Part shown: piece after piece, positions 28,338 to 62,062 of the stretch
How the letters are laid out: each line of letters starts with the position of its first letter
Numbering within the stretch: the stretch's first letter is position 1
Origin: Macrostomum lignano
Lineage: Eukaryota
Length of the DNA: 64,000 nt
Assembly (NCBI GenBank): GCA_002269645.1
Contig: NIVC01000712.1
Coordinates: 186,001-250,000 of the forward strand
Direction of reading: 5' to 3'
Position numbers and translations under genes: made by a program
Notes under the pieces: generated by a model
Database searches by the model: none
What the model was told of the DNA's origin: nothing
The model's input: only the letters and a program-made list of their open reading frames with translations

Positions 28338-28501
28338 TGAAACAGAACCATGATTAATTAGGAGGGCTTCTTGGCCAAAAAAGCTGCTAAAGCAGAATCT
28401 TGAAAAAAGTAGAGATTTGTCCCTTGTCTTCTAATGCCAAATGATGCCGATGTATCGAGACTAGAGAGTGCGAAAAAGTACAAAAGCAATATAAAGCAAT
28501 A

Positions 28502-32655: not shown

Positions 32656-35600
32656 TTAGCAGCGTTTCACATCCGCGCACAGCTGCAGCACGCTGTGACG
32701 CAGGCCGTCTTCCAGACTGTCCGTGAATAGCTGGCACAGCCGGTCGCAGGTGTCGGCCACCATAGCGGCAGTAGATTCGGGACCGTCAGGAGCGGCAGCG
32801 ACAACAGCGGATGCGGCCTTCATCTGGCTGGCAGCTGACTGCAGCTCATCGCGCAGGCTGCTCAGCTTGGTGTCGCGCAGGCTCATCAGGAATTCACAGT
32901 TCTCAGCCCGGTACTTGCACTCGTAGTACCTGGGTTGGAGTGGACATTTTTAATAGATGCTGGCTTTTTATGCGAGGCCTGTAGTGACATGCTTTACATG
33001 CCTATGCGAAAGCTGCTTATATTTATAATTCACTAACTTATTGGCAGAGATGATACAGCTGAAAAGACAGAACCTGACAGACAGACACTCACTTGCCAGC
33101 CACAGACACTCGCTTGACAGCCACAGACACTCACTTGGCAGCCACACAGATACTCCCTTGGCAGCCACACAGACACTCACTTGGCAGCCACACAGACACT
33201 CACTTGGCAGCCACACAGACACTCACTTGGCAGCCACACAGACACTCACTTGGCAGACACACACAGATGCTCACATGACAGCCACAGACACTCACTTGGA
33301 AGCCACACAGACACTCACTTGGCAGGCACACAGACACTCACTTGGCAGCCACAGACACTCGCTTGACAGCCACAGACACTCACTTGGCAGCCACACAGAT
33401 ACTCACTTGGCAGCCACACAGACACTCACTTGGCAGCCACACAGACACTCACTTGGCAGGCACACAGACACTCACTTGGCAGGCACACAGACACTCACTT
33501 GGCAGCCACACAGACACTCACTTGGCAGACACACAGACACTCACTTGGCAGACACACAGACACTCACTTGGCAGACACACAGACACTCACTTGGCAGCCA
33601 CACAGACACTCACTTGGCAGCCAGGTCCTTGCACTGCGCCTCCCGCTGGGTGCACTCGGCCTCCAGCTCTCGCAGCCGGTCCTCAAAGGCGGCCCGCTCG
33701 GCCTTAGCCGCGGCCTGTGCCGAGTTCCGCTGCTCGGCCACCTCCAGGCGGTCGAACTCGCTCTGCTCGAATCGCTCGCTGAGCTGGGCGAGCTCGTAGT
33801 TCAGGTACTCGATCTTGGAAGCACAGATAGTTGCAGTTAGGATTTAGTTAGCTAGCAGGCATGTCAGGTGAAGCTTGCAGATTGGATTAAAATACAGCCA
33901 AATAAGCATTCATCGAGAGATGCCTTAGTTCTAATTTGTTTAACGTCCGGATATAATACATTTCCTAGTATATAAATAAATAAGTATATACATCAGTTTA
34001 CCGCTCCCAACAATCCCAGAATCCCAAATCCCGCTTCCAACAATCTTAGAATCCCAGAATCCCAAATCCCGCTTCCAACAATCCTAGAATCCCAGAATTC
34101 TAAATCCCGCTCCCAAAAATCCTAGAATTCCTAAATCCCGCTCCCAAAAATCCCAGAATCCAAATATGCTCCCAAAAATCCCAGAATGACAAATCGCCAG
34201 TAACAAGTTAGCTAGCCACAAGCCTAGTCCATAGAAAGCGTGCCCTACCTGCAAAGCGTACTGCTCGCGTTCGTTAGCCATAGTCTGCTGGACATCAATC
34301 CAGGCCAGGTCAGTCTGGCACTCAACCGAAGCAGTGGGAACCGCAGATCGAACTCGAACATCCTTCTCCTGCTGCTGCTGTTGAAGTCTATCAACGGTGG
34401 CAGCCACGACAGCAGTCAGACGCTGTCGCTCGTCATTTAGCCGTTCAGCCTCAGCAGCCAGACAGTCTAGCAGAGGCCCAATAGCCGAGGCTTGCTTATC
34501 TAAATTGTCGATAGCTTCAACAATAGCAGCCGTTGTGTTAGCTGTAGAGTTGTTAACAGAACTATTGGCATTTCCTGTGCCGCTGTTAACCCTACCAGCC
34601 GCTTTCACTAGGGCACTGACGTTGGCGCTAGTGGCCGAGCGAGACAGATGCGTTTGAATTGAGCTGGCTAGTTCGGTTAGCAGAGTCGGGTAGCTGGCGC
34701 TGCGGCGTCTGTTGGCACCGCCGCTACTTTGGGTCTGAGCTGGAGCTTGCGGCGGCTGCTGCTGTTGCGGCTCCGACGAGGTGTCGCAGCTAAGCGACGC
34801 ATCTGGCTGCCGCGTGGCCTTTTTAGACGACTTTAAAATGGTTAAGAAATAAATGTTTCGTAAAAATTATATACATAATACTAGCAAATCATATGGCTAA
34901 CAGATCTAACATTATTAACATCCAATTCATGTAAACTCTGTAGAACTCAAGGGAGTAAGTGGGAAAGAAGTTTTATGGTCCTTAAATGGGCCGTTTTAAC
35001 GGGCTGTCGGTCTGCAATCCTAGAGGATTAACTCGAGGGGCAGTGGGGAGCTTGGTGGATTTCACCTATAGCAAACTAACCCTCCAATATTCTGATGATG
35101 ATGCTGGCCCAAAAAGGGCCGTTTCAACAGGTACTGGGTCTGGCACTAAGAAGAACGAAGGGAGTCACAAAGGGTAATACATTAACGAGGGAGACCAGAT
35201 TAGTGGCAGTAGGGAGGACTGGTAAAATTATGTTAGTATTTATATAGCAAACTAACCCTAAATGACCTCCAATAGGGTGTGGCCCTTAAAAGGGCCGTTT
35301 TAACAGGTTGTCGGTCTGAAATCCTAGAGGTTGGATGCGGGGATAGTGGGTAGCTTGGCGAATTTAGCCTATAGCAAACTAATCCTCCAATATTACGACG
35401 ATTTTTTCGTAAAAAAGAGCTGTTTTAACCTGTACTGGGTCTGGAACCTAGAAGAACGCTGTCAAAGGGTAATACATCAACGAGACCAGATTAGTGGCAG
35501 TAAAGAGCAGTGGCGACATTAGGTTAATATTGTTATAGCAAACTAACCCGAAATGGATTCTAATAGGATGTGGCCCTCAAAAGGGCCGTTTTAACGGGTA

Positions 35601-36195
35601 CTAGATAAATTTATTTAGTTCAAACTTTAGATTTAAGTTAATTTCAAAATGCTGATATTAGTAGTAAGAAATGCGTATACTACAAACCTTTTTCTTAGCC
35701 ACAGACATTGCAGGAAACATATCGCCGTTGCAATTGCTACCATTACCGCAGCTACGTTGCATCAGCGGTCGCCTCTGACGCGTCCCGTTGGCAATAGCAA
35801 CAGCAGTAGAGCCAACAGCTGAGCCTTCATAATTTTGCACTTTTTTATCCAATAAAAAGTCGCGAAATCTAGCCAAATGCGGAGCTGTTGAGCCTTGCAA
35901 TAATTGCAGCAGATCGGACACTGTAGAATCGTTATACACTGCAGGATTGTTGGAATTTGAGCTCAACTGCGGAGCTGGCAGGAATTGAGCGCTAGGACTT
36001 GCCGGCTGCGGTGGCTGCTGCTGCCGACGGCCCCGGCCAGCGGTTCTGGAACGGGCGCAGCTGGCCGCTAAACTGCCAGCTATGGCGAGGCCGCGGCGAA
36101 CAGGCGGAGTGCCGTTACGCTCGGAGCGGCCAGACGGCGAGGGCGACGGGGATGATGACAGCTGCGGAGTCGGGTGGAAGGGTTGGAGGGATTGT
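32656..36195 (-). CDS. Coiled-coil protein of unknown function, last four exons (5' end not found)
   Basis: complement(join(32656..32929,33614..33813,34249..34830,35688..36195)). All junctions GT-AG with consistent phases (0,0,2); open throughout; C-terminal half heptad-rich (ELAQLSERFEQ..RLRELEAEC..). Confidence 0.75.
33076..33622. repeat. 23-bp minisatellite overlapping a splice donor
   Basis: Minus-strand unit GCTGCCAA|GTGAGTGTCTGTGTG, more than 20 copies. Confidence 0.95.
33998..34185. repeat. About 39-bp intronic minisatellite
   Basis: CCGCTCCCAA(C/A)AATCC(C/T)AGAATCCCAAAT variants. Confidence 0.85.
34970..35600 (-). repeat. Intronic A-B-A-B repeat with five histone-type stem-loops
   Basis: Hairpins at 34977-34992, 35106-35120, 35281-35296, about 35408-35421 (decayed) and 35572-35587, each with a minus-strand 5' flank GTT(A/G)AAAC. 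Confidence 0.85.
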
Positions 36196-36254
36196 CTGAT
36201 ATTTATGTTATTTTGTCAGTAACTACTAGCGCCTGTCTACCGGTGACTGTCTTC

Positions 36255-36800
36255 TGGTGTGTCTGTCAGTGTCTGTCTCATGGTGTGTCTGTCAGTGTCT
36301 GTCTGCCAGTGTGTCTGTCTACCAGTGTGTCTGTCTGCCAGTGTGTCTGTCTGCCAGTGTGTGTCTGTCTACCAGTGTGTCTGTCTACCAGTGTGTCTGC
36401 CAGTGTGTCTGTCTACCAGTGTGTGTCTGTCTACCAGTGTGTCTGTCTGCCAGTGTGTCTGTCTGCCAGTGTGTCTGTCTGCCAGTGTGTGTCTGCCAGT
36501 GTGTCTGTCTGCCAGTGTGTGTCTGTCTACCAGTGTGTCTGTCTGCCAGTGTGTCTGTCTGCCAGTGTGTCTGTCTGCCAGTGTGTGTCTGCCAGTGTGT
36601 CTGTCTGCCAGTGTGTGTCTGCCAGTGTGCCTGTCTGCAAGTGTGTCTGTCTGCCAGTGTGTCTGTCTACTAGTGTCTGTCTACCAGTGTGTCTGTCTGC
36701 CAGTGTGTGTCTACCAGTGTGCCTGTCTGCCAGTGTCTATCTGTTAGTGTGTCTGTCTAGCAGTGTCTGTTTGCTGGTGTCTGTCTACCAGTGTGTCTGT
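36255..36800. repeat. (GTCT/CCAGTGT) compound microsatellite
   Basis: GTGTCTGTCTGCCA variants. Confidence 0.93.
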
Positions 36801-37503
36801 CAGCTGTGTTGTCTATCTTCTGATGTAATAGACTCAGAGCTGGCATATTCTCACACACATTGTATAGGTACAGACTTTCTCATTGTTAGTCTTGAATACA
36901 CTATGATATAGTGGTAAGCTTTTCATAGGCCTATGTGAATATAAATCTTATGGAAAGTTTATGCATTTGGTATCAGTTTAATCAAGGGATCATTTTGTTC
37001 TTACTATAATTATTCAAAAAAGCATGTGAAAAGTCACTTACACTTTCCAATTCTTCAAATGTAGAAATATCACACATTACTAACAATTAGCACTTGTAAT
37101 TGTTGACAAAAATTAAAATATCAATGTTTTTGATGCAGAATTTCAATGCTGAAAACTATTAAAAGTATTTTCATTAGGATCTTCAAATGAAAAGTATTTT
37201 TTTATTAGATTTTATTCTGGTTTATTGGCAAAAAACAATGTATAAGTTTTTATTAAAACTGTATTTGTGTTAACTTAGTAATTGGAATCCAACAAGCCTT
37301 TTGAGTCAAATATTTATTTTAACAACCCCAATTAAAATAATGCTTCCTTATCTTTTGGTTTTAAAATGAAAATGATATGAAACAAGACTAATGATACTTG
37401 GAAGGCACAAAGAACACAATGTTTAGAAAGAATTATATATTATATAATTTAATGTCTGACTAAATTATGACATTAATCCAATAGTCCCAGCTAGCAGTTC
37501 TAG

Positions 37504-39608: not shown

Positions 39609-42600
39609 GTTTTAATAGCTTGTATCTCTACTAGATTTGTATTTTGCATCTGATGAGTCATTTGAATCAGGGCTCTTATCTTCCATGCCAAATCATCTAG
39701 CAAGTGGAATTATTCTTGAGCTAGGGCCTATAAGTATAGATGAATACATTATGAATTGTATCACACAATATTCACTATATTCATTTTACTTTGACTTCTA
39801 GACATTCATGAATCATGACTTATGTAGTATGCTCACTAAACTGTATTAAGAAATTTACAAATTTCCTCACAGGCACCTGCCACTAGATGGCATACAGATT
39901 AGCTATTATAAAAACACAAGTAATCTACATGGTATCCTAATTAGCTGATGAGGCATAATTAGCCTTAAAAATATAGTCATAGTAAATCCTGCTATTTATC
40001 CAAAAGTATGTTTATTTTGCTTTGCTATTTTAGAGGTAACTCATATTTTTTATTACCAACTGTCGCATGGCCAGCATTATTTAGGAGTTTGCACATGTAT
40101 ATGCAACAAGGTCCCACCCAGGCAATCTAGTACTGCATGTAAGATGTAATGATGTATGGTGTGTAGCAAGGAGAATTCTTTAGGCTTTTGAAAATATATG
40201 ACAAACGTAATGAATTCACAAACATACAGTACACGTTGGTGGATTTGTAGGTGGTTGCACTGGTTGGTTCAGATCGAGAATCAAGATCTAACAGATGAGC
40301 TACAGTAACATTTTCTTATCAGATATCCGAGATCTAGTTGAAGAATGTGCCGGCATTTGAAATTTTGACAATTTATAAACAAATCATCCAACACAAATAT
40401 GCAGAAAAATTTTAGTCCTAGTTAAAAAGGCTTTTAAAGTTAAATTTAAAATAGGCCTAATATTAATAATCCAATGGTAAATTGTTCCACGACAATCAAA
40501 TTTGGTACAAACTTAATTCCCTTAGAGCTTGATGTTTAATATTATAATTTAAAGTACATGTTTGATCATTACCTTTCCTCACAGAAAAGTACAAAACTCT
40601 AAAGATTAATAAAAAGCAGTTGTTAAATTCTGAAAGAATTGGAGAGGCAATAAGAAGTAAAAAAGAGGTATAAAAGGATTAAGGTAGACTTGCTCCTTTT
40701 CTTGCAAATTAAAATATAACAAAAGAACTGCTGTAGGACGAAAGTATAGGGTTTAGCAGTTCTGTAACATTTCAGAAAATGCTGTCAGAAATTTCTTTGT
40801 TTGTACTAACCAAATTTGATAAAGTACAGTAAACGGTTGTGTGCAAAACAACAACAACAAAAACAAAAACGACAACAACAAAAACAGCAAAAAATTACAT
40901 TGTCAGCCAGTCAAGCGTAGGAAAATGTCATAGGGCGCGTTTTAAGGACTGGGCGCGAACGTATAGGCCGCACCGCCTGCGCGGTGCACCTGCATCAGCC
41001 AGCTATGTAGCAAGGAAGGCAGTCAAGAGGTCCACGAAACGCCCGCCCGTAAGTAGGGCGGGCGCGTCAGCAGTATGCAGCACCTCCTGCACTGGCTGTG
41101 GGCAGTGCGACTCGGCTCACATAAAATCGCCTGCCAGCTAGAGCTAACAACAGTAATTGCTGGGATGGCAACAGGCCGGTGCGGTGATCGCGTATATGCG
41201 TATCAATCTTTGACTACGAGCTAAAATAAAAGCTACATATACACGATTTTAGTACGTATTCATTTCCCGATTGACATTCAGATTCACATTCAAATTTTAA
41301 CAAAGCCGCTGTAACCTTTCTTTACTTGAACGAAACGCTTTAAAATTTTACAAAAACTTTGACGCAATCAAGAAAAAAACCTACGTAAAATATCTCAGCA
41401 TTTAAAAATTGACTGTACAAATTATTCACATATAAAGTTTGTTCCTATCGAGACCTTAGTGTATTATTATGCAACTCAACAAAACGGCTTAAAATACACG
41501 CAGAGCTACGAGACTTTATTTTTCTCTTGACGCATGCGAGATGCGTTGGCAAGTCAAAAATCAGCACCCTAGCTTAAAGCCTGTACGAGTTATTCACCTG
41601 CAAACTGTGTTCCTATCTCCGTAGTGTATTTTGGGGGTCCAGCTTGACATTCGCTGACAGACACTTCTACTCAACGTAGAGCTATGAAACTTTATTTTTC
41701 TCTTGACGCACGCGAGATGCGTTGGCAAGTCAAAAATCAGCACCCTAGCTTAAAGCCTGTACGAGTTATTCACCTGCAAACTGTGTTCCTATCTCCGTAG
41801 TGTATTTTGGGGGTCCAGCTTGACATTCGCTGACAGACACTTCTACTCAACGCAGAGCTACGAAACTTTATTTTTCTCTTGACGCATGCGAGATGCGTTG
41901 GCAAGTCAAAAATCAGCACCCTAGCTTAAAGCCTGTACGAGTTATTCACCTGCAAACTGTGTTCCTATCTCCGTAGTGTATTTTGGGGGTCCAGCTTGAC
42001 ATTCGCTGACAGACACTTCTACTCAACGCAGAGCTACGAAACTTTATTTTTCTCTTGACGCATGCGAGATGCGTTGGCAAGTCAAAAATCAGCACCCTAG
42101 CTTAAAGCCTGTACGAGTTATTCACCTACAAACTGTGTTCCTATCTCCGTAGTGTATTTTGGGGGTCCAGCTTGACATTCGCTGACAGACACTTCTACTC
42201 AACGCAGAGCTACGAAACTTTATTTTTCTCTTGACGCATGCGAGATGCGTTGGCAAGTCAAAAATCAGCACCCTAGCTTAAAGCCTGTACGAGTTATTCA
42301 CCTGCAAACTGTGTTCCTATCTCCGTAGTGTATTTTAGGGGTCCAGCTTGACATTCGCTGAGAACCACTATATTGCTGTATAAAAACTGGAAAATTAGGA
42401 CGGGTGAAAATTCATATCTCGAGCAACTGTTTATTTTCAAAACAAATTAACATTTTTCAAAGCGTAACTTAAAGCGGGAAATTAAAGCAATGAACGGAAC
42501 AAAAATTTTTAAAGAAAAACATCATGCATCAAGAAGCATAAATAAATTTTGCGCTGTATGGCTTAATCTGCATGCTTAGAAAAGTACTAAGAGATTTTTA

Positions 42601-42743
42601 GTGCATTTTGTAGAAGAAGAAAAACATCATGTACTAGAGGAAGGAAATTAATTATTTAGAGTTGGACGAGAATTCTTTTATTGAAATGGCAAGTAAATTA
42701 TTTAAGACTTCGAAACCTTTAGCTCAATTAGCTCATTCCTGCT

Positions 42744-43203
42744 TTTTGTGTCGTAACTAGGAGCCCGTAAAAGGGCCGTTCGTCTAACTAACCTTTTCTT
42801 ACTTTTTCTTACTACTCTACTTTAAGTAGTGCAGTTAATAAATTATTCGTATATTGTATTGTGAAACGTATTTTTAATCACGTGACATTTTGGCGGTCGA
42901 ATTTATCGATCGTGTAACAATTTACTGTTAAATATCAAATATAAGCGCGGGTTGCCCTAAGTGGAGCTCGTACCTTTTTTTCCGGCAAAAAGTCTTACCT
43001 GCCACTCGTGTTTCCTGTGTTAGTCTGCTGAGACACCACATTGGCGACGAGGATGGGATACGAACCCACGCGGGGAAACCCCAATGGATTAGCAGTCCAG
43101 GGAGGGGGGAAATGTTGTGTCGTGACTAGGAGCCCGTAAAAGGGCCGTTCGTCTAACTAACCTTTTCTTACTTATTCTTACTACTCTACAGTAGTGCAGT
43201 TAA
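42744..43203 (+). mobile_element. TRIM-like miniature LTR element, 3' LTR truncated
   Basis: About 297-bp 5' LTR ending CA (43040), PBS TGGCGACGAGGATGGGA, polypurine tract 43100-43112, then TG-starting copy of the first about 90 bp of the LTR. Confidence 0.7.
43042..43099 (-). tRNA. tRNA-Ser(GCT) 3' two-thirds copy with encoded CCA (not a functional gene)
   Basis: Minus strand TGGA CTGCTAA TCCAT TGGGGTTTCCCCGC GTGGG TTCGTAT CCCAT CCTCGTCG CCA; D arm and 5' acceptor strand missing. Confidence 0.9.
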
Positions 43204-43692
43204 GAAAAAGTAACAATTGTCGAAAAAACGAAAAATGTAGAAAAATAACGACACAACACTGCTCACTGGCATAAAACGAATCTGTTACTCGTACATGAGC
43301 TAGGAATAAAATCCACGAAATTATATAAATTAGATTACAGTATTTACACTTTCCGCCTCTGTTGTCTGGACAGTGACTAAGATTCAGGGAATTCATCTAA
43401 TGGGAAACATATGACGGGATAGAAAGTTCACAAATTCGGCTCTGGTTATAGCTGGGTCACCCACCTGAGCCTGAAAAATAATTTCTGTACGGACCCCTGC
43501 CACACATCCCTTATGAGCACGCATCGCATCATTTTTACGCTGCTTTAGTGGGGTCCTCATGATCGGGAGTTGTTTGAGCCATCTGGTGTAGCCCGGAAGT
43601 CGAAAACGGGACTCATAGGAAGTCTGCTACACCATGCAGCCATGCAGAAGACTTTTTAAACAGTTGGATCCTCTTTCTGTGAATGATGAAGA

Positions 43693-43970
43693 GGTGACCG
43701 GACATTTTGTCAACCAGCATTTCGTCAACCGGCAGTTCGTCAACCAGACATTACGGCAACTCAGCAAATTGTAGCTGATAATTATAGCTCTGCACCAGCC
43801 AGAGAATGTGAGAAGTGATAATGCGATGTCAAATTTGTTTAAAGAATTTACACTTGGAAGTAAATTTTAGCTTGAATCAAATGTCCAGTTGCCGTAATGT
43901 CTTCATGGTTACGTGATGTACATGTACGGTACCAGTTGTCAAAATGCCGGTGGACGAAATGTCCTGGAAC
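43693..43970. mobile_element. MITE with 9-bp TSD nested in the foldback spacer
   Basis: Imperfect TIR ..CCGGACATTT / AAATGTCCTGG.., internal CATTTCGTCAACC repeats, flanked by TGATGAAGA on both sides. Confidence 0.7.
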
Positions 43971-46416
43971 TGATGAAGATACGCCCGTACTAGCGCATTA
44001 GACTACAAAAACCATTGTACTTTAAGGGAACGTCAGAACGTTAGCTCTTTTGTTTTCAGATGATCAGATGTCAGAAAAATAAAGTTTCATAGCTCTACGT
44101 TGAGTAGAAGTGTCTGTCAGCGAATGTCAAGCTGGACCCCCAAAATACACTACGGAGATAGGAACACAGTTTGCAGGTGAATAACTCGTACAGGCTTTAA
44201 GCTAGGGTGCTGATTTTTGACTTGCCAACGCATCTCGCGTGCGTCAAGAGAAAAATAAAGTTTCGTAGCTCTGCGTTGAGTAGAAGTGTCTGTCAGCGAA
44301 TGTCAAGCTGGACCCCCAAAATACACTACGGAGATAGGAACACAGTTTGCAGGTGAATAACTCGTACAGGCTTTAAGCTAGGGTGCTGATTTTTGACTTG
44401 CCAACGCATCTCGCATGCGTCAAGAGAAAAATAAAGTTTCGTAGCTCTGCGTTGAGTAGAAGTGTCTGTCAGCGAATGTCAAGCTGGACCCCCAAAATAC
44501 ACTACGGAGATAGGAACACAGTTTGTAGGTGAATAACTCGTACAGGCTTTAAGCTAGGGTGCTGATTTTTGACTTGCCAACGCATCTCGCATGCGTCAAG
44601 AGAAAAATAAAGTTTCGTAGCTCTGCGTTGAGTAGAAGTGTCTGTCAGCGAATGTCAAGCTGGACCCCCAAAATACACTACGGAGATAGGAACACAGTTT
44701 GCAGGTGAATAACTCGTACAGGCTTTAAGCTAGGGTGCTGATTTTTGACTTGCCAACGCATCTCGCATGCGTCAAGAGAAAAATAAAGTTTCGTAGCTCT
44801 GCGTTGAGTAGAAGTGTCTGTCAGCGAATGTCAAGCTGGACCCCCAAAATACACTACGGAGATAGGAACACAGTTTGCAGGTGAATAACTCGTACAGGCT
44901 TTAAGCTAGGGTGCTGATTTTTGACTTGCCAACGCATCTCGCGTGCGTCAAGAGAAAAATAAAGTTTCATAGCTCTACGTTGAGTAGAAGTGTCTGTCAG
45001 CGAATGTCAAGCTGGACCCCCAAAATACACTACGGAGATAGGAACACAGTTTGCAGGTGAATAACTCGTACAGGCTTTAAGCTAGGGTGCTGATTTTTGA
45101 CTTGCCAACGCATCTCGCATGCGTCAAGAGAAAAATAAAGTCTCGTAGCTCTGCGTGTATTTTAAGCCGTTTTGTTGAGTTGCATAATAATACACTAAGG
45201 TCTCGATAGGAACAAACTTTATATGTGAATAATTTGTACAGTCTATTTTTTAATGCTGAGATATTTTACGTAGTTTTTTTCTTGATTGCGTCAAAGTTTT
45301 TGTAAAATTTTAAAGCGTTTCGTTCAAGTAAAGAAAAGTTACAGCGGCTTTGTTAAAATTTGAATGTGAATCTGAATGTCAATCGGGAAATGAATACGTG
45401 ATTTTAGTGACAGATAAGTTTGCTATATATTGCTATTAATTATATATAGTACGTGAAAAATTTACGAAAAACTGCAATTTTTCATCATTTAGAACGCTTA
45501 AACACTATTTGTAGCTGTGCTGTGGTGCTCTCTAAAATTAGTTTTATTACTGACAAACGTTCATGCAATTGCGGATTGTGGGATGCCACACTGTCTTTAC
45601 ATATACATTTTTGCATCTTTAAAAACGACGTACCAATAACGTACTTGTGCAATAAAGACATAGAGACGTTTGTACTTGTAAATAGCTCGTACTACATACA
45701 AAAGACAGTACATGGTACACACGGAACTTCTGATAAAAAAGAATCACAAAGACAAGGGCAAAGTATAGGGATCGAAGCTGGGGGCTATGATGATATTTTT
45801 CCAATCCAAATTTTAATATGTGAATTTTGACAGGTGATTATAAATATCAATCAAAACATCTCTGGTATATGTCTGATTGAGTAATTTAAGTTAAAAAGAT
45901 TTGAAAATTACAAATATTTGCGAATATTTATAGCTATTGTGGGCTCGTGCGAGAAGCGATCGCGAGTTATCGAACACTTATATATAGTTCGATAACCCTC
46001 GATAACAATACGAGCGTATTACGAGAGTTTACTATAGATGTCCCTTCTACATGCATGCAGCGACGTCCTGAGACGTCGGGTACGCCGCAGAAGCGTAGGC
46101 GGACATTGAAATTTTCCACGGAAAGTGAAACAGACTGGACAAAGTGTACGTAAGCAACATTTTTCGATAGATTAGTATGCGCAGGTAGTAAGATAGTATA
46201 GGAAAAGACATTTGTTAGTCATATCTAAGTTTTATTATGTACATGTTAAGCCTCATTTGAAACGTTTTGATAGTACACTTTATTTGATTGGCTATCCATC
46301 CTTGACCTGACAACCATGCCATATTTTTGCTATAAAGTTATTCTCAAGTCTTTTCGTCAGGCTAGCTATCATGCCTTACATGTACATGTAGCTTCAGTCC
46401 CGAAAGCTTGCATTAT

Positions 46417-48953
46417 TCACTCCACTAGAATCATCATTCGAATGCTTTTTAGCGACACAAAAGCATTATCAATGGCATACCAAGTAATGTACTTGTGATG
46501 ACGAATCTCGCCGCTAACAAACAGTCCATTAGGATTGGTGTAGAAGCAGCTCTTGAACCACCATCCCGACGCGCTGGCGTAGTTAATCGAGCAGGAAAAT
46601 GAACTAGCCTGATCGTTATCACGGTCCATAGTGGAGAACATCATGCCTCGGCTCCTCTCGGCCAGTCCGTCGGTGGCGATGTTGGACCTCTCGGTGGCGT
46701 AGCGACTGTAGCTCAGCAGGTAGTTGGTCGACGAGTTGCCCACCTGAAAGCCGTCGTACTCGCAGTGGAACTGAGAGCCGTCCCATTTGGTCAGTTCAAA
46801 GCGTACGGTTGCTCCGGCGCCGTTATTGCCCGTGTCGCCATATGTGGTGAGTCGGTGCAGTTGTTTGAGTCCTGCATTGCAATATTAAGGATTATTATAT
46901 TGCATGTACTCGGGAAAAGACTGAGTGAGAGTGACAGCTTGATGAGTAAAGAGCGCCGTGTCTCTTTGTTGGCGCCGCTGTTTCTTGGTAGGCATCCTGT
47001 TTCTTGGTGGGCGCCCTGTCTCTTGGTGGGCGCCCTGTCTCTTGGTAGGCGCCCTGTCTCTTGGTGGGCGCCCCTGTCTCTTAGTGGGTGCCCTGTCTCT
47101 TGGTGGGCGCCCTGTCTCTTGGTGGGCGCCCTGTCTCTTGGTGGGCGCCCCTGTCTCTTAGTGGGTGCCCTGTCTCTTGGTGGGCGCCCTGTCTCTTAGT
47201 GGGTGCCCTGTCTCTTGGTGGGCGCCCCTGTCTCTTGGTGGGCGCCACTGTCTCTTGGTGGGCGCCCATGTCTCTTTGTGGGCACCCCTGTCTCTTGGTA
47301 GGCGCCCCCTGTCTCTTGGTAGGCGCCCCTGTCTCTTGGTGGGCGCCCCTGTCTCTTGGTGGGCGCCCCTGTCTCTTGGTAGGAGCCCCTGTCTCTTGGT
47401 GGGCACCCCTGGCTCTTGGTGGGCGCAGCCGTCTCTCCTGGTGGGCGCCCCCTGTCTCTTGGTAGGCGCCCCTGTCTCTTGTTGGGCGCCCCTGTCTCTT
47501 GTTGGGCGCCCCTGTCTCTTGGTAGGAGCCCCTGTCTCTTGGTGGGCGCCCCTGTCTCTTGGTAGGAGCCCTATCTCTTGGTGGGCGCCCCTGTCTCTTG
47601 GTAGGAGCCCCTGTCTCTTGGTGGGCGCCCCTGTCTCTTGGTAGGAGCCCCTATCTCTTGGTGGGCGCCCCTGTCTCTTGGTAGGAGCCCCTGTCTCTTG
47701 GTGGGCGCCCCTGTCTCTTGGTAGGAGCCCCTGTCTCTTGGTGGGCACCCTGTCTCTTTTTGTGGGCACCCTAACCCCTGGTTTCTAGGCCGGTGCATGC
47801 CACGACCGAGAGATAGCAAAAGTTGATGAGCTCCCGTCATTCATCGAGTTCAGGTTACCTGTTTCATTTAGTTTTTGGAGAAGCGAGAAAAACAACCCTA
47901 GTTGGGGTAACGGAGGCTTTGAGCACAATTGCAAATTAAGGCCACAGTCGCCAGCGAAGAGGCAAAGCAGTCATGCCAATTCCACACCCGGTTACGTTCG
48001 AGCGTTACGCTCTCACATACGCTGGTAGACTACCAGACTAATTTCCTTGAACGAGTGATAAATTAAGGGGGTCCAGTGCAGAATCGCACTCAGCAACCCC
48101 ACCACAGGCCCCCTACATGCAGAATCCACCAAGCACAAGCCCTATTGTCTTCCCAAGAGAGCCACCTGTCCAGAAGTTGTCCGCATCGCCAAATCCTGTT
48201 TCGTAGTCTAGCCAGGTCCGGCTGAAGTTCACGCTGGCAGACAGACGCTGCTGCAGTAGGCAGAAGCGACGGGAGCCGATCCAGCGCACGCGACAATCCG
48301 GAAATTCGTCAGTTCGATCTGTGTGGTTTTAAATTGTCAGCTTGAATTGAGTTGGAACAAATCGTATCCAAGGACCACAAGAAGTTACCGTTGTATCTTC
48401 ATAACTACGGTTACGATAACTGTTGTTACTGTTGTTGCTACGGTGACTTCTTGTGGTCTTCGATGGTAACTTTATGTATTAGTGACTTACACAGCTTCAT
48501 GAGCTCACAGCCATTAGGCAAGTAGCTGTGGCTTATGTCGCTAACGTTGTACATCAGGCAGAGTCCATTAGGCAGTCTGCACACCGATTTGCAATGCCTT
48601 TTGTGCCTATTCAGAGCGCACAGCTGCAGACACTGCGAGAGACTGTCCGATGGAGTCACGGTTGACACCGTTGCGATGGATGCATTGATACCAGGATTTG
48701 GAGCGATTGACAAGAAGCCGAAGGTGCCTAAAGTTTATGTACAGGTATCTATGATACAGTAAAGATAAGAATATCCGTTGTTTTTGGTGCGTACAAAGCG
48801 ACCAAGCATTATATAATGCACTACAGATCACAACGCATGCTAAATTTAAGCATATTACTTACTCGTACTTCTGGATGTCTCACAAGAAAATACTGTTTGG
48901 TCATGGCATACGAGACTTGCCATGGCAACCAAAAGCTGGAGCAGCAGTTGCAT
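46417..48953 (-). CDS. Secreted protein with a PAN/apple-like Cys domain and a fibrinogen C-terminal (FReD) domain, four exons, 311 aa
   Basis: complement(join(46417..46871,48166..48318,48491..48727,48863..48953)), all phase 1. Signal peptide MQLLLQLLVAMASLVC; C..C...C.S..C cluster; FReD motifs QQRLSASVNFSRTWLDYETGFG..NFWTGLKQLHRLT, FSTMDRDND and GWWFKSC..NPNG. Confidence 0.85.
46955..47775. repeat. 19-21-bp intronic minisatellite
   Basis: GGGCGCCCCTGTCTCTTGGT variants. Confidence 0.95.
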
Positions 48954-50367: not shown

Positions 50368-51685
50368 CGAGGGGTGATCAAAAAGTTCTGCAAGTGACCT
50401 CACAACTCTGTGCTACAGCAGCCGAGGCGTCTAATCAGTGTCACATTCCCTAAAAGTACTTTCCACCACTATCTATGCACCGTCGCATCCGTGTGCACCA
50501 TGTCTGAAAGCAGTCCTGGTACTCCGAAGTTGGTATGCCCTGTAGAGCTGAATGTACCGCTTGGGCAAGGTCTCGCATGCGTGAAAACGGCCTCCCAGAA
50601 ATGACGGATTTGATCCTCGGGAACAGCCAAAAGTCGCAAGGTGCTAGGTCTGGAGAGTAGGGTGGATGGGGCAGCAGCCGGACCCCCTGCTGCTCCAGGT
50701 ACGCCATGGTTGATGCCGCTCTGTGCGGTGCCGCATTGTCATGGTGCAGCAGGAGTCGAGGTCCATGCCTGGTTCGCGCACGTTCCTGCCGCTCCTGCAG
50801 CACGCCTGGCAGAACAGTGTCTGTGTAGTACCTGGCAGTCACTGTGGCACCCGCTGGAAGGATGTTCACCGATACAACACCCTGAGAGTTGAAAAAAATG
50901 GTGAACATCCGCTTCCGACTGCGGAATCCGGTCTTCAGCACCTCAGGCCTTGGCTCATCTTCTGCCAGCCAGACCATGTTGGACTGCTTATCCTTCATGG
51001 TAAAAGAAGGAGATCCAACATTCGTCTCCTGTGATGACATCCGACAGTCGTCGTGGGCCGTGGGGCTCAAAAATTTGCAGCCACAAGCGACAGATGCGCA
51101 CCCTCTCTGCTTGCTGCTCCGGAGTGAGAAGATGGGGTACCACCGAGCGCAGGTCTTTGTGCGGCCTAGTTGCTCATGCATGATGTTATGAGCACTTCCA
51201 CAGCTGACACCAAGCTCATAGGCAATGAATCTTAGCATAATGCTTCAATCCTCACGAATTATTGCATCGGCATGGGCCACGACATCTTCGGTCACGGATG
51301 TCCGGGGTCAGCCAGACCTCGGTTCATCGTTGAAGCTGTCCCAGCCTTCCAAGAAATGGCGCAGCCAGCGGGCAACCATGTCAAATGATGGAGCAGAGTC
51401 AGCTAAAACATTCACCAGATCGGTGTGAATCTCAGTCACTTTGCAACCAAGTTGCATGCACATAAAGATATAGAAGCGAACACTGTCTTTTGTTGTTTCC
51501 ATCAGCTACTGAAAACACATGGAAAATATATGGCTGTGAAATTTTACTGGAGCACATTTGGAAGCCAAAAATGCATATAAATATAGCAAACAGATACAGC
51601 TGCATATGGGTAAGTTTTTGGCTTTTCCCGATTCTATAACTAAAAGCTATAACAAAAGGTTGCAGAACTTTTTGATCACCCCTCG
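50368..51685 (-). mobile_element. Mariner transposon, full length (1318 bp), defective
   Basis: TIR CGAGGGGTGATCAAAAAGTTCTGCAA at both ends with TA TSD. Transposase 51502..50450 has HDNAAPH and YSPDLAPCDF (DD34D) but also two in-frame stops and frameshifts near the WVP motif. Confidence 0.95.
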
Positions 51686-52249: not shown

Positions 52250-53653
52250 ATGGCAGACATTTTCAAGCAGTTGTACAGCATTAACATTGTCAACTACATC
52301 GGAGTCGAGGACTTCTCAGACCGGTTGAACTTTCTCTACACAGCAACACTTCTCACGATTTGCTGCACGATAACAATCGGCAGAGGCTACGTCATGCACC
52401 CGATCAGCTGCTATTTGCCCAACACCTTCGGCAGCTATCACGAAGAGAAAGACATGAAAGGCCAGCTGGACTTCGTCAACAACTACTGCTGGTCCGAGGG
52501 TACGTACGCTGTGGATGTGAGAGAGTTCCACCTAGAGGGCACGTCAGATAGCGGCGGCCTCGAGCTGTACGCGGACAGGAAGATCAACTTCTACCAATGG
52601 GTGCCATTTGTGCTGGCGCTGCAGGGTCTGTGCTTCTACCTACCCAGAGTGATCTGGCACGCTGTGAGCTTCGGCCGGGCCGGCACCGACGTCGGACACA
52701 TTGTCAAGGTGGCGCGTGACGCGTCGCGCGCCGACGACAAGAAGCACGACCGATTGCTGAACCACGCCTGCCGCATGGTTGAGCAGATGCTGGACAGGCA
52801 GGCGAACAAAGCCCGACCGGACGACCAGAGCCAGCTTGAAGGCATCCGGCGGGCCTGCAATCGATGCCTAGCGATTGTCATGCCGACGCGTTTTGTTGGC
52901 AGCGGGCTTATATTTACCTACCTGCTAATCAAGCTGACTTACATTGGAAACGCAATCGGTCAGTTAGCTCTAATGCAGAACTTTTTGCAGCTGAATTCAA
53001 CTCGCTATAGTCTACTCGGCATTAAATTGCTTGACGACATCATCTGGGGCAAGGACTGGCACAATACTATCGTGTTTCCTAGAATAGGCTGTTGCGCAGT
53101 CTACCTTCGCTCCGCTGCTCGCGGTAACTGGCAGTTCTCGCAGTGCTCCCTGCCAGTCAATATGATCTACGAGAAAATCTACGTATTTCTATGGTTCTGG
53201 TTTATTTTCGTTGCGTTGGCAACCATTTTCAGTACAATATCCTGGATCTGGAGATTGTGCAATGCGGCTATGAGCAGCAGATTTGTGCGCAAGTACCTCA
53301 AGCTGGCCGACAACTACGAGGAGCTGAAGAAATCCGGTCAGGTGAAGGGCTTCGTTAGAAACTTTCTACGTCGAGACGGCGCCTTCCTAATGAAGATGAT
53401 CGCGCTGAATTGCGGTGATCTAATCTGCGCGGAGGTCATCCAGACGCTTTGGTTGCGCTACAAAAAAGCCAAAGGCTTCATAGCCCTGGATGAGGCCCAG
53501 CAGGAAAATCTCGAGAATGCGGTGCTGAAGCTCAGCTGCAAAAATTTGCCGCTGTCGACTGATAATAAGACTCGGCGTCGGTTTTTCCATCGTCAGCAGA
53601 GCCTACCGGTTAATTCGCTGTTCCGGCATGAGGAAGGCGACCCCAAAGCGTGA
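52250..53653 (+). CDS. inx: Innexin (intronless)
   Basis: EDFSDRLN, NNYCW, FYQWVPFVL, FPR..C and CSLPVNMIYEKIYVFLWFW; four TM segments. Confidence 0.95.
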   Translation: MADIFKQLYSINIVNYIGVEDFSDRLNFLYTATLLTICCTITIGRGYVMHPISCYLPNTFGSYHEEKDMKGQLDFVNNYCWSEGTYAVDVREFHLEGTSDSGGLELYADRKINFYQWVPFVLALQGLCFYLPRVIWHAVSFGRAGTDVGHIVKVARDASRADDKKHDRLLNHACRMVEQMLDRQANKARPDDQSQLEGIRRACNRCLAIVMPTRFVGSGLIFTYLLIKLTYIGNAIGQLALMQNFLQLNSTRYSLLGIKLLDDIIWGKDWHNTIVFPRIGCCAVYLRSAARGNWQFSQCSLPVNMIYEKIYVFLWFWFIFVALATIFSTISWIWRLCNAAMSSRFVRKYLKLADNYEELKKSGQVKGFVRNFLRRDGAFLMKMIALNCGDLICAEVIQTLWLRYKKAKGFIALDEAQQENLENAVLKLSCKNLPLSTDNKTRRRFFHRQQSLPVNSLFRHEEGDPKA

Positions 53654-55281
53654 GGGTTGACTGCATGTTTGCTGCGCCTACAGTTTCTCTCGAATAGTGC
53701 CTGGTTAACACTCAACAGTGACACCCGCGTTGTGAGCAGAGATCGACCTAACTAGCATGTTTTGAGAGCATTTCGTGGTTCTGACTTCATCTTTGGCTGT
53801 GTAGTATAGCTTTAACTGTTCTGTAAACATGTGTTTTAGCAAAATTCTTGTTTGGTTCTGAAATCTTACTCATACGAAATTAGTAAAATCACAAACTAAT
53901 TTGCAGATTTTCTTAGAAATAAAAAAAACGGTCCCTAAATCATTTGAATTTCATTTAAATGGCCCATAAAATTTTCGTTATTCTAACTTACCGCTTCTCT
54001 AACCCCGTTTTTCTTTACTTCTTTCAGATGTATTCAGATAACAATTCTTGATACAATACGGTTTCGTGTCGAATCTCTCAGATGTGCATTATTTTATTTA
54101 TTATTATTTACTTAGTAATCATTGTAAACAGTGTGTATAAACACATTTTGTGACTCATTTATAAAGACATTATTTCTGCCATAGAGCCTATATATTTTAA
54201 TGTGTTTGTTATGATGACAATCTGAAGTTTGATCATTATGCGCCTTTAGACTAAAGAGATGAAATATACATATGTAATCTATACATTTAATTTTTTTATA
54301 ATCAGAAATTATTAAATATTAAGAAGTGACGAAGCTGCACTTATTGTTGACAATACATTCACTTTTGCTGGTAGCAGTTCGGCGGAGTTCCTAAAGCATC
54401 TAGCTCGAAAAAGCCAGCCAAATGACTGCGAAATAGAGGACGGCAAAGTAAGCAGAGCTAGATCACGTCCTGCATTTGTCTGCAGGGTTCGGGACAAACC
54501 ACGCAACATAAGTGCACAAACGGTTGTTTAAACTTGGCTGGAATATAGGGTGCAGGGTGCCTATCGTAGCTACCGCTAGATTTCTTCCTTGTCTCTTGAT
54601 GTTTTCTTTCTTTTCACCTTTATCGTCACATGCATAGATTTTGGCGTCTAATATTTGAATTTGTTTGTTTTTTAATGAGGACGAAAGCTATAGCTGACTA
54701 GAATTAGTCCATGAGAATATTTCTATATTGTAGTCATTAACGAAGTCGTTGAAAAAACAACAACCAAAAGTTACTTCGATCTCGGAAAAAACAGAAACAT
54801 AAAATCAATGAGATTTAGTGGTACTCGAATGTCCAGAATCCAACATTGGAAAATTAATGTTTGTATTGAGATGTCGCATAAAACGATCTTATTGGACCGT
54901 AAGTATCAAAAAATTTACAATGAAAACGCTATTAGCTACATAGTCTATGACTTGTATTAAAAATATTACACACGACAATTATGGAAAATATTGTATGAAA
55001 ATATCAAGCTCGGGGCTACAGAAGTTTTAAAAAATTACGAGTGGTTTAATCATGGACTTCTATACTTAGCATGCTAAGTATAGAAGTCCATGGGTTTAAT
55101 ACAGAAATATATTCGGTAAAAGCACACATGCATTGGTGGCATAATAAGACTAATAAAGCTGTTGAAAACAAATGATCACATGAATGGACGATGACACAAG
55201 TCGAATCTTGCGTGACTAATGGAATCAACAAACCTGACTGAAAAAACGGACAAATAGTGTTAGCATACAGCGATCCATATT

Positions 55282-56763
55282 CTAAGTTGTCGTTGAAATG
55301 CTTCTCTGATAAATCAGCCTGCGCCGCTTCTGATTAGCGGACTTGTCTTCGACGTCCAATCCGATGTCTTCGTCGACTTCCGAAGCCGGGGGCGCCGAAG
55401 GCTCCGCCGGTGGTTGGTGTGTCACCGGCTGCAACAGCAGCTTCGGTTTCTTGACTCTGGCCTGTTCTGGCAGTCCAGCAGTGGAGATGACCACGAGGTT
55501 CTTGACTGAGACGCCTTGGTCTCCATGTGTCTCCTCGGCCTTGTGCACTCCGTTGGACCGCAGGAAGCGGATCCAGAGGCGGCGAAGAATTTCCGTGCAG
55601 GCCAGATCGCCGCAGTTTAGCGCAATCATTTTTAACAAAAAGGTGCCATCGTTTCTAAGAAACTCCAGTTCGAACTTCTTCAGCCAAGGATTGTTGCGCA
55701 ACTGGTTGTAGTTATCCGCCAGCTTGAGGTACTGCTTTACAAAGCTGCTGCGCCGGTGACCATGGCTGTAAATGCGAACAACCCAGACGAGAATGCTAAT
55801 TGCTGTGGCCGAAGCTACAAATACCATCCAGAACCACAGGAAGATGTAGATCTTCTCATTGATCATGTTGATTGGAAGGGCGCACTGCGACATCTGCCAG
55901 TTGCCGACGCCAGCCGTTTTCATGTAGACAGCGCACGATCCTACTCTCGGGAACACCATGCTGTTCTCCCAGTAAATTCCGCTGCTCAGGTCGCCAAGAA
56001 GTCTCAGTCCGAAGAGTCCGTACTCAGTGTTGTTTAGATTCAAGAATCTTTGCATGATGACCAGCTGGCAGGAGGCGTTGATAAAGTACAGCGTTTTGAT
56101 GGCGAGGTAGCTGCATATGATCGTATTGCCTTGCGGCTGAGTTGACAGTACCAGGCCAAACCGGTTTAGCGCCAGTTGTTGGACTGACCTCAGAGCCGAG
56201 TAATGGCTAAACTGATGACTGCGACTGAGTAGCTGCTCAAGCCTTGCACAGGCGTGCTGCATCAACTTGTTGTGCTTCTCCCTATCGGCCTGGATAGCGT
56301 CGCGAACTGTGCGCACGATGTGAGCAACGTCCGTACCGGAGCGCTGATTAGTGATGAAGTTCCACAGCACGCGGGGCAAGTAGAACATGATGCACTGCAC
56401 GCCCAGCACCAAGGGCACCCATTGGTAGTAGGTGATTCGCTTGTCCCGGTAGCGGCCCAGTCCGCCGTCCTTTTGCGTGGCGTCGATGCTGAACTGTCTC
56501 GGGTGGACGGCAAACGTGCCCTCCGTCCAGCAATAGTTGTTCACAAACAGTTCTTGACCTGCTGTGCCAGAGCCAAACATGTTCGGTATGTAGCAGGCCA
56601 GCGGGTGAAAGACGTAGGTTCGAACTGTGACCACCGAACAACATACTAGAAGTACGGTGACAGTAAACAGAAAATTTAATCGGTCAGGGAAATCCTCGAG
56701 TCCGATGTAGTTGAAGGCTTTCGGCAGAGCCTTGTACTGGTTGATGAGCTCGTTTGCCACCAT
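55282..56763 (-). CDS. inx: Innexin (intronless)
   Basis: EDFPDRLN, NNYCW, YYQWVPLVL, FPRVGSC and CALPINMINEKIYIFLWFW. Confidence 0.95.
   Translation of the reverse strand: MVANELINQYKALPKAFNYIGLEDFPDRLNFLFTVTVLLVCCSVVTVRTYVFHPLACYIPNMFGSGTAGQELFVNNYCWTEGTFAVHPRQFSIDATQKDGGLGRYRDKRITYYQWVPLVLGVQCIMFYLPRVLWNFITNQRSGTDVAHIVRTVRDAIQADREKHNKLMQHACARLEQLLSRSHQFSHYSALRSVQQLALNRFGLVLSTQPQGNTIICSYLAIKTLYFINASCQLVIMQRFLNLNNTEYGLFGLRLLGDLSSGIYWENSMVFPRVGSCAVYMKTAGVGNWQMSQCALPINMINEKIYIFLWFWMVFVASATAISILVWVVRIYSHGHRRSSFVKQYLKLADNYNQLRNNPWLKKFELEFLRNDGTFLLKMIALNCGDLACTEILRRLWIRFLRSNGVHKAEETHGDQGVSVKNLVVISTAGLPEQARVKKPKLLLQPVTHQPPAEPSAPPASEVDEDIGLDVEDKSANQKRRRLIYQRSISTTT

Positions 56764-57999: not shown

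Positions 58000-62062
<4,063 letters not shown>

What the first reader, a model, noticed from the sequence alone, without database searches (positions are those of the whole stretch)
42744..43203. Miniature LTR-like element whose interior is a reverse-transcribed mature tRNA-Ser
Seen: LTR(..CA)-T-58 nt exactly antisense to tRNA-Ser(GCT) including CCA-polypurine tract-TG..LTR copy. The T-loop reads TTCGTAT instead of TTCGAAT, i.e. T at tRNA position 58 (window 43060), and the copy stops at about position 28. Established: CCA is added post-transcriptionally; LTR primer-binding sites are normally copied only about 18 nt, up to m1A58; RT misincorporates at m1A58 and stalls at m2,2G26. Inference: the RT read through its own primer, leaving a fossil record of tRNA modifications and a minimal TRIM-like family (PBS plus PPT only). 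The internal A/B-box remnant might matter, by analogy to Cassandra TRIMs carrying 5S sequence.
Basis: partly seen in the sequence, partly recalled or inferred. Interest (0 to 1): 0.8.

Follow-up and report, generated by a model that had tools for sequence, protein, structure and literature searches.

The report
Mini-LTR relic holding copied tRNA primer
A 515-bp dead retrotransposon relic in the flatworm Macrostomum lignano consists only of repeat ends, a 58-base DNA copy of the mature serine tRNA that primed its replication, and a purine tract; it is a rare genomic fossil of a reverse transcriptase running too far into its own primer, not a working gene.

Summary
Window 43042-43099 is antisense to tRNA-Ser(GCU) positions 76 to 28. 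It matches six intact eukaryotic tRNA-Ser(GCT) genes from metagenomes at 54 of 55 encoded bases and adds the non-encoded CCA. The only mismatch is at tRNA position 58. The copy sits exactly where an LTR primer-binding site should: ...CA-T-TGG after a 297-bp LTR. A 13-nt polypurine tract and a second LTR start follow it.

I correct two points. The insertion runs from 42744 to 43258 and is flanked by a 5-bp target duplication (CTGCT). The second LTR is not simply truncated: after 95 bases it continues as an A-rich 40 nt and ends in an exact inverted copy of the LTR's first 11 bases.

The best reading is read-through of the tRNA primer during plus-strand strong-stop synthesis in an LTR retroelement. 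The product was joined end-to-end to a PPT-LTR end and fixed in the genome. The "tRNA modification fossil" reading is plausible but rests on one locus. The "TRIM-like family" and pol III promoter ideas are unsupported: I found only an allelic or duplicate copy, and there is no A box.

The element is nested in a foldback DNA transposon. Interest is moderate.

The parts
42739..42743 (+). Left copy of the 5-bp target-site duplication, CTGCT
   Evidence: Read directly. It is identical to 43259-43263 and lies immediately outside both element termini.
42744..43040 (+). Complete 297-bp LTR (T[T]TTGTGTCGT ... GACACCACA), with imperfect terminal inverted repeats
   Evidence: Its first 99 nt are repeated at 43113-43207. 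It ends in CA, one base before the PBS. No other copy occurs in the window.
43041..43041 (+). Single T spacer between the LTR end and the PBS
43042..43099 (+). Extended primer-binding site: 58 nt antisense to mature tRNA-Ser(GCU) positions 76->28. TGG (CCA complement) is at 43042-43044; the single mismatch, tRNA position 58, is at 43060.
   Evidence: It matches 54 of 55 encoded bases of six intact tRNA-Ser(GCT) genes, plus the non-encoded CCA.
43100..43112 (+). Polypurine tract GGGAGGGGGGAAA, directly abutting the second LTR start
   Evidence: All 13 nt are purines, and no other internal sequence lies between the tRNA copy and the LTR.
43113..43207 (+). Second LTR copy, equivalent to LTR positions 1-99 (4 substitutions and a 4-bp deletion)
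43208..43247 (+). A-rich 40-nt tail with no homology to the rest of the 5' LTR; partly complementary to the T-rich part of the second LTR copy
   Evidence: no significant forward match; the 146-nt unit 43113-43258 folds as a hairpin: dG -25.3 kcal/mol, z -5.6.
43248..43258 (-). Right terminus ACGACACAACA, an exact inverted copy of the LTR 5' terminus TGTTGTGTCGT
43259..43263 (+). Right copy of the 5-bp target-site duplication, CTGCT
41254..45399 (.). Host element: a 4.1-kb foldback/MULE-like DNA transposon in whose unique core the mini-LTR unit is nested. Its long TIRs are built from a 176-bp satellite, and it has a 9-bp TSD (GATTTTAGT).
   Evidence: The whole unit is absent from the homeologous contig L012.

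Best explanation
This is a non-coding relic of an LTR retrotransposon of Macrostomum lignano that used tRNA-Ser(GCU) as its primer.

Shown by the sequence: a complete LTR is followed, in order, by one spacer base, a 58-nt DNA complement of the mature tRNA's 3' part including CCA, a 13-nt polypurine tract, and a second LTR start. The whole 515 bp is bounded by a 5-bp target duplication.

Inferred mechanism:
1. During plus-strand strong-stop synthesis, reverse transcriptase copied the tRNA still attached to the minus-strand DNA.
2. It did not stop after 18 nt at m1A58. It inserted dA opposite position 58 and went on to position 28, just short of G26 (m2,2G26 in most eukaryotic tRNAs).
3. This over-extended end was joined directly to a PPT-U3 end. 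That is the geometry of a 2-LTR circle junction, or end-to-end template jump, in which neither primer (tRNA or PPT) had been removed. The joint leaves LTR-tRNA58-PPT13-LTR and no coding sequence.
4. The product entered the germ line. This happened either through integrase, giving the 5-bp TSD (possibly after one round of transcription across the joint), or by homologous recombination with a resident short LTR.

The aberrant right-hand LTR (95 nt, then an A-rich tail, then an inverted U3 terminus) is not explained with confidence. The element has no present function that I can detect.
For: - tRNA identity and CCA.
- Position and orientation fit a PBS exactly (...CA-T-TGG), with the PPT abutting TG of the next LTR.
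- Only 13 purines separate the tRNA copy from the LTR. A random internal deletion would rarely end there.
- TSD and termini.
- No ORF has any Pfam or database homologue.
- The same structure occurs in a second contig.
- Literature: the plus-strand strong stop is normally set by m1A58, with minor products extending further, and an unmodified tRNA is copied to its 5' end (PMC13191261). Loss of m1A58 increases read-through (PMC8599865). A tRNA copy between the two LTRs of a cloned circular MLV DNA was reported by Colicelli & Goff 1986, as described in PMC12220202. m1A followed by A gives T or G misincorporation (PMC4787781).
- M. lignano carries about 400 LTR-retrotransposon families (PMC12801592).
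Against: - Only a single locus is known. No parent element with the same LTR and no second copy could be found or searched for.
- The M. lignano tRNA-Ser(GCU) gene itself was not seen; the reference genes come from unidentified eukaryotes in metagenomes.
- About 1.2 random substitutions are expected in the 58 nt, so T58 could be an ordinary mutation.
- No mismatch is seen at positions 32 or 37.
- The copy ends at position 28, not 27.
- The two LTRs differ downstream of position 99, which normal reverse transcription does not produce. At least one further event must therefore be assumed.
Confidence: 0.72

Rival explanations
1. It is one member of an amplifying TRIM-like family (LTR-PBS-PPT-LTR) that is mobilised in trans by an autonomous partner and inherited the 58-nt PBS from a founder.
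For: The structure has every cis element a minimal retroelement RNA needs. A 5-bp TSD flanks the mini unit as such. TRIMs are known in flatworms and other animals (PMC4558846, PMC6934838, PMC10886601).
Against: No second copy was found in the 64-kb window or in about 180 kb of other M. lignano DNA; the only other copy is the allelic or duplicate one. A protein search with all LTR reading frames found nothing. The two LTRs are not equivalent. This sampling is far too small to exclude a family of up to thousands of copies.
Confidence: 0.25
2. The read-through is real, but T58 is an ordinary post-insertion point mutation, and the end at position 28 is just where the joint happened to fall. On this view nothing is recorded about tRNA modifications.
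For: The LTR copies differ at 4 of 95 positions, which predicts about 1.2 substitutions per 58 nt. The L001 copy has already lost one C in the variable arm. No mismatch is seen at positions 32 or 37.
Against: A single random hit falls on position 58 with probability 1/58. The change is A->T, which is allowed by the m1A-A signature (PMC4787781). The end lies within 2 nt of G26. An unrelated partial copy of the same tRNA in metagenome contig L003 also differs at position 58, with G there.
Confidence: 0.25
3. A full-length element with an ordinary PBS lost its interior by a random genomic deletion, or a tRNA pseudogene or tRNA-derived SINE landed next to a solo LTR.
For: Deletions and nested insertions are common in this window.
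Against: The tRNA part is antisense, begins with the non-encoded CCA one base after the LTR's terminal CA, and lacks the 5' half with the A box. The other breakpoint leaves exactly a 13-nt purine tract before the LTR. Neither feature is expected from random deletion or from SINE insertion.
Confidence: 0.04
4. The right-hand 146-bp unit (43113-43258) is a pre-existing short solo LTR of a related subfamily, which owns the TSD. The LTR-tRNA-PPT segment entered by homologous recombination of an aberrant cDNA or small circle with that solo LTR, without integrase.
For: The unit has perfect 11-bp terminal inverted repeats and TG...CA ends. It shares only positions 1-99 with the long LTR. One crossover of an LTR+tRNA+PPT circle within the shared 99 nt reproduces the observed order exactly. 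This is inference.
Against: No independent copy of such a short LTR has been seen. It requires two subfamilies that are 96% identical in U3-R but unrelated in U5.
Confidence: 0.3
5. It is an assembly or sequencing artefact.
For: The genome is highly repetitive.
Against: Two distinct contigs, 99.5-99.9% identical but with other structural differences, carry the same structure.
Confidence: 0.02

Closest known systems
Over-extended plus-strand strong-stop DNA, and the 'primer over-extension sequence' of lentiviruses and spumaviruses
   Same: Reverse transcriptase copies the primer tRNA beyond m1A58. Minor products reach positions 55, 54 and 37, and an unmodified tRNA is copied to its 5' end (PMC13191261, PMC8599865).
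   Different: Those are in vitro or cell-culture intermediates, or a few conserved bases next to the PBS. Here a 40-nt over-extension, reaching position 28, is fixed in a germ line.
Circular retroviral DNA with a tRNA copy between the two LTRs (Colicelli & Goff 1986, J Virol 57:674, as described in PMC12220202)
   Same: The order is LTR, reverse-transcribed tRNA, LTR, which is taken as evidence that a tRNA primer was copied and retained at the end-to-end joint.
   Different: That was an episomal clone of a mutant murine virus carrying a nearly full-length copy of a spurious tRNA-Gly primer. This one is chromosomal, has a TSD, uses the cognate primer, stops at position 28 and includes the PPT.
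[quoted passage not shown]
   Same: It is tiny, non-coding, has an LTR-PBS-PPT-LTR layout and a 5-bp TSD (PMC4558846, PMC6934838).
   Different: TRIMs are defined as families. Here there is one locus, the LTRs are unequal, and the interior is nothing but primer copies.
Helenus, Cassandra and Ajax (TRIMp3: TRIMs with tRNA- or 5S-derived sequence)
   Same: A small-RNA-derived sequence sits inside a miniature LTR element (PMC10886601).
   Different: In those elements the small-RNA sequence lies inside the LTRs, in sense orientation, with pol III boxes, and is unrelated to the PBS. Here it is internal, antisense, contiguous with the PBS and lacks the A box.
Strong-stop-DNA model for the origin of tRNA-derived SINEs (Ohshima/Okada, 1993; recalled from memory, not read here)
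   Same: On the minus strand the unit reads as tRNA 3' part, CCA, then the complement of U5-R. This is the primer plus strong-stop DNA arrangement.
   Different: Only the 3' 49 nt of the tRNA are present, so there is no internal promoter and no LINE-type tail.

Membership tests
LTR retrotransposon derivative / TRIM | Two direct long terminal repeats with TG...CA ends | tested here: inconclusive
   The 5' LTR is complete (297 bp; TG mutated to TT at 42744-45; CA end). The second copy is homologous only over LTR positions 1-99 and then diverges, ending in an inverted U3 terminus with CA.
LTR retrotransposon derivative / TRIM | PBS complementary to a tRNA 3' end, including CCA, just after the 5' LTR | tested here: met
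   TGGCGACGAGGATGGGAT... starts one base after the LTR's CA and matches tRNA-Ser(GCT) genes plus CCA.
LTR retrotransposon derivative / TRIM | Polypurine tract immediately upstream of the 3' LTR | tested here: met
   GGGAGGGGGGAAA at 43100-43112 abuts TGTTGTG at 43113.
LTR retrotransposon derivative / TRIM | 4-6-bp target-site duplication | tested here: met
   CTGCT lies on both sides, at 42739-43 and 43259-63. No empty site is available for confirmation.
LTR retrotransposon derivative / TRIM | Small and non-coding | tested here: met
   The unit is 515 bp. The longest stop-free stretches are 65 aa and have no Pfam or database match.
LTR retrotransposon derivative / TRIM | Multiple dispersed copies with independent TSDs, and an autonomous partner sharing the PBS and LTR ends | not testable with these tools
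   No tool searches the M. lignano genome by DNA. There are zero further copies in 64 kb plus about 180 kb.
Helenus/Cassandra-type TRIMp3 | Small-RNA-derived sequence with pol III A and B boxes located inside the LTRs, in sense orientation | tested here: not met
   The tRNA-derived part is internal and antisense. It covers positions 28-76 only, so there is no A box and the B box is altered at position 58. Definition from PMC10886601.
tRNA gene, pseudogene or tRNA-derived SINE | Cloverleaf with the 5' half; no encoded CCA; pol III terminator | tested here: not met
   ARAGORN finds none. Rfam gives only a 5'-truncated hit below the gathering score. CCA is present, whereas genuine genes lack it.
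2-LTR circle junction carrying unremoved primers | U5 end, then tRNA copy, then (PPT), then U3 start, with nothing else between | tested here: met
   That it was ever extrachromosomal cannot be tested.

The most novel reading that the evidence does not exclude
The LTR-tRNA58-PPT13-LTR joint may be a fossil end-to-end (2-LTR-circle-type) junction that was transcribed from one LTR to the next and re-integrated. That would catch the birth of a miniature LTR element from a replication dead end. Its tRNA copy would then preserve the modification state of an ancient flatworm primer tRNA: m1A58 and a block at G26 present, and no block at positions 32 or 37.
Probability: 0.25. Interest if true: 0.7.

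Novelty: new variant of a known kind. Interest (0 to 1): 0.5.

Why it matters
Read-through of the tRNA primer is known from test-tube and cell-culture work on retroviruses, where it is treated as a dead end. A germ-line copy shows that such a product can survive and be inherited. It also suggests one concrete route by which coding-less miniature LTR elements could arise: joining of two ends whose primers were not removed. If more such copies exist, they would give a genome-encoded readout of which primer-tRNA modifications stop or miscode a natural retrotransposon reverse transcriptase. As it stands, this is one old, inert locus in a repeat-rich genome.

Tried and rejected
- LTR copies by BLAST inside the window: none.
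- LTR copies in nine other M. lignano loci (about 200 kb): only the duplicate locus L001.
- Protein search with a chimera of all stop-free LTR frames, hoping to reach called ORFs on other contigs: nothing.
- Exact-protein look-ups of ORFs next to the element, of the histone H2A and of the mariner ORF, aimed at paralogous or empty sites: not on record.
- IMG/VR scan with the 18-nt PBS, to obtain a data-derived pol seed: only a chance hit in a GC-rich phage contig.
- RT motif scan of all fetched flatworm DNA: none.
- tRNA genes in all M. lignano loci: none, so the host tRNA-Ser gene was not obtained.
- Rfam at gathering threshold: no family.
- The tail 43208-43258 as a poly(A) remnant: rejected, because it is too impure for a unit whose LTRs are 96% alike.
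- The tail as the deleted 3' end of the same LTR: rejected, because the last 11 nt match the inverted U3 end 11/11 but the U5 end only 8/11.
- The sigma-70 promoter/terminator scan is irrelevant to a eukaryote and found nothing.
- Colicelli & Goff 1986 could not be opened. It is cited only through PMC12220202.

Full report
**Organism and locus**

The window is eukaryotic. It is rich in minisatellites and carries a cluster of intronless innexin genes. The closest named relatives of one innexin are all from flatworms, led by Macrostomum lignano. The identical protein is encoded on M. lignano contig NIVC01005093.1 of GCA_002269645.1 (L001).

L001 is 99.5-99.9% identical to window 40042-63645 but lacks a mariner-like insertion. 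It is therefore a separate allelic or duplicated copy. L001 contains the whole structure studied here, differing only by one C fewer in the copy of the tRNA variable arm. A more distant homeologous contig (L012) lacks a 4.1-kb block that contains the structure.

**Anatomy **

- CTGCT at 42739-42743.
- A 297-bp LTR at 42744-43040. It starts TTTTGTGTCGT, against TGTTGTGTCGT in the second copy, and ends GACACCACA.
- A spacer T at 43041.
- A 58-nt tract at 43042-43099.
- GGGAGGGGGGAAA at 43100-43112.
- A second LTR start at 43113-43207. It matches LTR positions 1-99 at 91 of 95 aligned positions, with one 4-bp deletion.
- An A-rich 40 nt at 43208-43247 with no counterpart in the 5' LTR.
- ACGACACAACA at 43248-43258.
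- CTGCT at 43259-43263.

The 11-mer TGTTGTGTCGT, allowing one mismatch, occurs four times in 64 kb against 0.76 expected. Three of those occurrences are the two LTR starts and, inverted, the right terminus. An exact inverted terminus followed at once by the same 5 nt that precede the left terminus cannot reasonably be chance. The expected number of such places within a few hundred bases is of the order of 1e-7. The insertion unit is therefore 42744-43258 (515 bp) with a 5-bp target duplication, not 42744-43203.

**The tRNA copy**

No tRNA gene is called in the window, and no Rfam family reaches its gathering score. When the 58 nt are searched alone, Rfam's tRNA model aligns 43045-43099(-) as a 5'-truncated tRNA covering model positions 27-71 (23.2 bits, E=0.002).

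To compare with real genes, I scanned metagenome contigs with the 40-nt core, leaving position 58 free. Six of the seven hits are intact tRNA-Ser(GCT) genes in eukaryote-type tRNA clusters. Their sequence is GACGAGGTGGCCGAGTGGTTAAGGCGATGGACTGCTAATCCATTGGGGTTTCCCCGCGTGGGTTCGAATCCCATCCTCGTCG. Four of the six match this sequence exactly. L006 differs in the acceptor stem and L007 at one T-stem base, and these differences account for their lower identities. All six have A58 and the GGGGTTTCCCC arm, and none encodes CCA.

The element matches the four exact genes at 54 of 55 encoded positions (98.2%). The alignment shows that the only difference is at position 58 (window 43060). It also shows that the element adds TGG, the complement of the post-transcriptional CCA. 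The genes have A27 and G26. Window 43100 is G where the complement of A27 would be T, so the copy ends at position 28.

These genes come from unidentified eukaryotes, not from M. lignano. No tRNA gene was present in any M. lignano DNA I could fetch.

**What it is**

The tract begins one base after the LTR's terminal CA. It is antisense, includes CCA, and is followed by a purine tract that abuts the TG of the next LTR. This is the PBS/PPT logic of an LTR retroelement, with the PBS extended from the usual 18 nt or so to 58 nt.

Established retroviral biology explains how such a sequence is made. Plus-strand strong-stop DNA copies the tRNA still attached to the minus strand and normally stops before m1A58. 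Minor products run on to positions 55, 54 or 37, and an unmodified tRNA is copied to its 5' end (PMC13191261). Cells lacking the m1A58 methyltransferase show more read-through (PMC8599865). The 58-nt tract is therefore best read as an over-extended strong-stop product.

Only 13 purines lie between the end of the tRNA copy and the next LTR. A random deletion within a multi-kilobase interior would rarely end there. The joint instead looks like the right end of a linear cDNA, still carrying the tRNA copy, fused to the left end, still carrying the PPT-primer copy. That is a 2-LTR-circle-type or end-to-end template-jump junction.

A cloned circular murine leukaemia virus DNA with a reverse-transcribed tRNA between its LTRs is a precedent (Colicelli & Goff 1986, as described in PMC12220202). 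I could not open the original.

**Modification 'fossils'**

The single mismatch puts dA in the cDNA strand opposite position 58. m1A is known to cause misincorporation as well as arrest, and with A as the 3' neighbour (A59 here) the mismatches are T or G with little C (PMC4787781).

The caveats are these:
- The two LTR copies differ at 4 of 95 positions. If both changed after insertion, about 1.2 substitutions are expected in 58 nt, so one mismatch is unremarkable. Only its position (a 1 in 58 chance) is informative.
- The copy ends at position 28, near G26 but one base short of the classical stop at 27.
- Positions 32 and 37 read correctly, whereas tRNA-Ser(GCU) carries m3C32 and t6A37 in other eukaryotes (my own knowledge, untested in flatworms).
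- The duplicate locus has already acquired an indel in this tract.

A hint in favour comes from metagenome contig L003, which holds an unrelated partial copy of the same tRNA. Its only internal difference from the gene is also at position 58, where it has G.

I rate the m1A58 reading as more likely than not, but unproven.

**The right-hand end**

Normal reverse transcription makes two identical LTRs. Here the second unit shares only positions 1-99 and then has a different 51-nt tail. The last 11 nt of that tail match the inverted U3 start 11/11 but the U5 end only 8/11. The 146-nt unit folds as a long imperfect hairpin (dG -25.3 kcal/mol, z -5.6).

Two readings remain open:
- (a) It is a snap-back or otherwise aberrant end that integrase could still use, because both termini are U3-type ends.
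- (b) It is a complete short LTR of a related subfamily that was already at this site and owns the TSD. The LTR-tRNA-PPT segment then entered by one homologous crossover within the shared 99 nt.

I cannot decide between these without other copies.

**Family status**

No further copy exists in the window or in about 180 kb of other M. lignano DNA (L010-L017). A protein search with all LTR reading frames found nothing. Exact look-ups of neighbouring ORFs failed. None of the tools searches this genome by DNA, so the 'family' claim and the autonomous partner remain untested.

M. lignano has about 400 LTR-retrotransposon families, mostly Ty3/Mdg4 (PMC12801592), so a parent is plausible.

The pol III idea is not supported. 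Only tRNA positions 28-76 are present, so there is no A box, and the B-box region is on the antisense strand and altered at position 58. This distinguishes the element from Helenus/Cassandra-type TRIMs, whose small-RNA sequence lies in sense orientation within the LTRs (PMC10886601).

**Context**

The unit is nested in the 1.7-kb unique core of a 4146-bp foldback/MULE-like DNA transposon (41254-45399). The long inverted ends of that transposon consist of about 244 bp of unique sequence plus arrays of a 176-bp satellite. It has a 9-bp TSD, GATTTTAGT, and the whole block is missing at the homeologous locus L012. Copies of the mini-LTR unit, if any exist, could therefore have been spread by the DNA transposon rather than by retrotransposition.

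**Verdict**

Primer read-through is well supported. The modification record is plausible. The family and promoter ideas are not supported. This is a new variant of a known kind of element, and a neat natural example of a process known from retrovirology. It is of moderate interest unless more copies are found.

Noticed in passing
window 41254-45399 (TSD at 41245-41253 and 45400-45408): A 4146-bp foldback/MULE-like DNA transposon. Its long inverted ends consist of about 244 bp of unique sequence plus inverted arrays of a 176-bp satellite (41498-42361 and 44073-45156). It has a 9-bp TSD, GATTTTAGT. The whole block is absent from the homeologous contig L012 and present in L001.
   Followed up: partly
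window 50368-51685: A mariner-like insertion (ORF 50450-51238; Pfam Transposase_1/DDE_3) that is absent from both L001 and L012. It is therefore a recent or polymorphic insertion.
   Followed up: partly
window 42760-42785 (minus strand); compare 28316-28340 and 35280-35300: The LTR contains a near copy (14/16) of the local histone mRNA 3' stem-loop (GGCCCTTTTAAGGGCC with its AAAAC flank), antisense to the LTR. Its origin is unknown.
   Followed up: no
L003 (metagenome contig Ga0209679_1133821), 1100-1580: A partial copy of the same tRNA-Ser(GCT), positions about 32-73, with G at position 58 and TGT in place of TGG. It lies next to a ...GTGACA end, together with a second CTCGTCGCCA motif, a 60-nt polypurine run and a 115-bp unit with 33-bp inverted ends. 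This may be the same kind of primer read-through in another organism, but the contig is too short to tell.
   Followed up: partly
window 52250-62062: A cluster of intronless innexin genes (52250-53653 +, 55282-56763 -, 61076-62062 -, and a fragment at 58000-58521 -), interrupted at 59551-61038 by a 1.5-kb (ATAG)n array.
   Followed up: no
window 25277-25657: An intact histone H2A ORF. The exact protein is not on record in the contig index. A 291-bp tandem repeat at 34976-35599 carries histone stem-loop-like palindromes.
   Followed up: no
window 1573-24470, 33081-36814, 46959-47758, 63425-63668: An unusually high density of G+C-rich minisatellites (periods 14-94 bp), which generate long spurious ORFs in several frames.
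   Followed up: no
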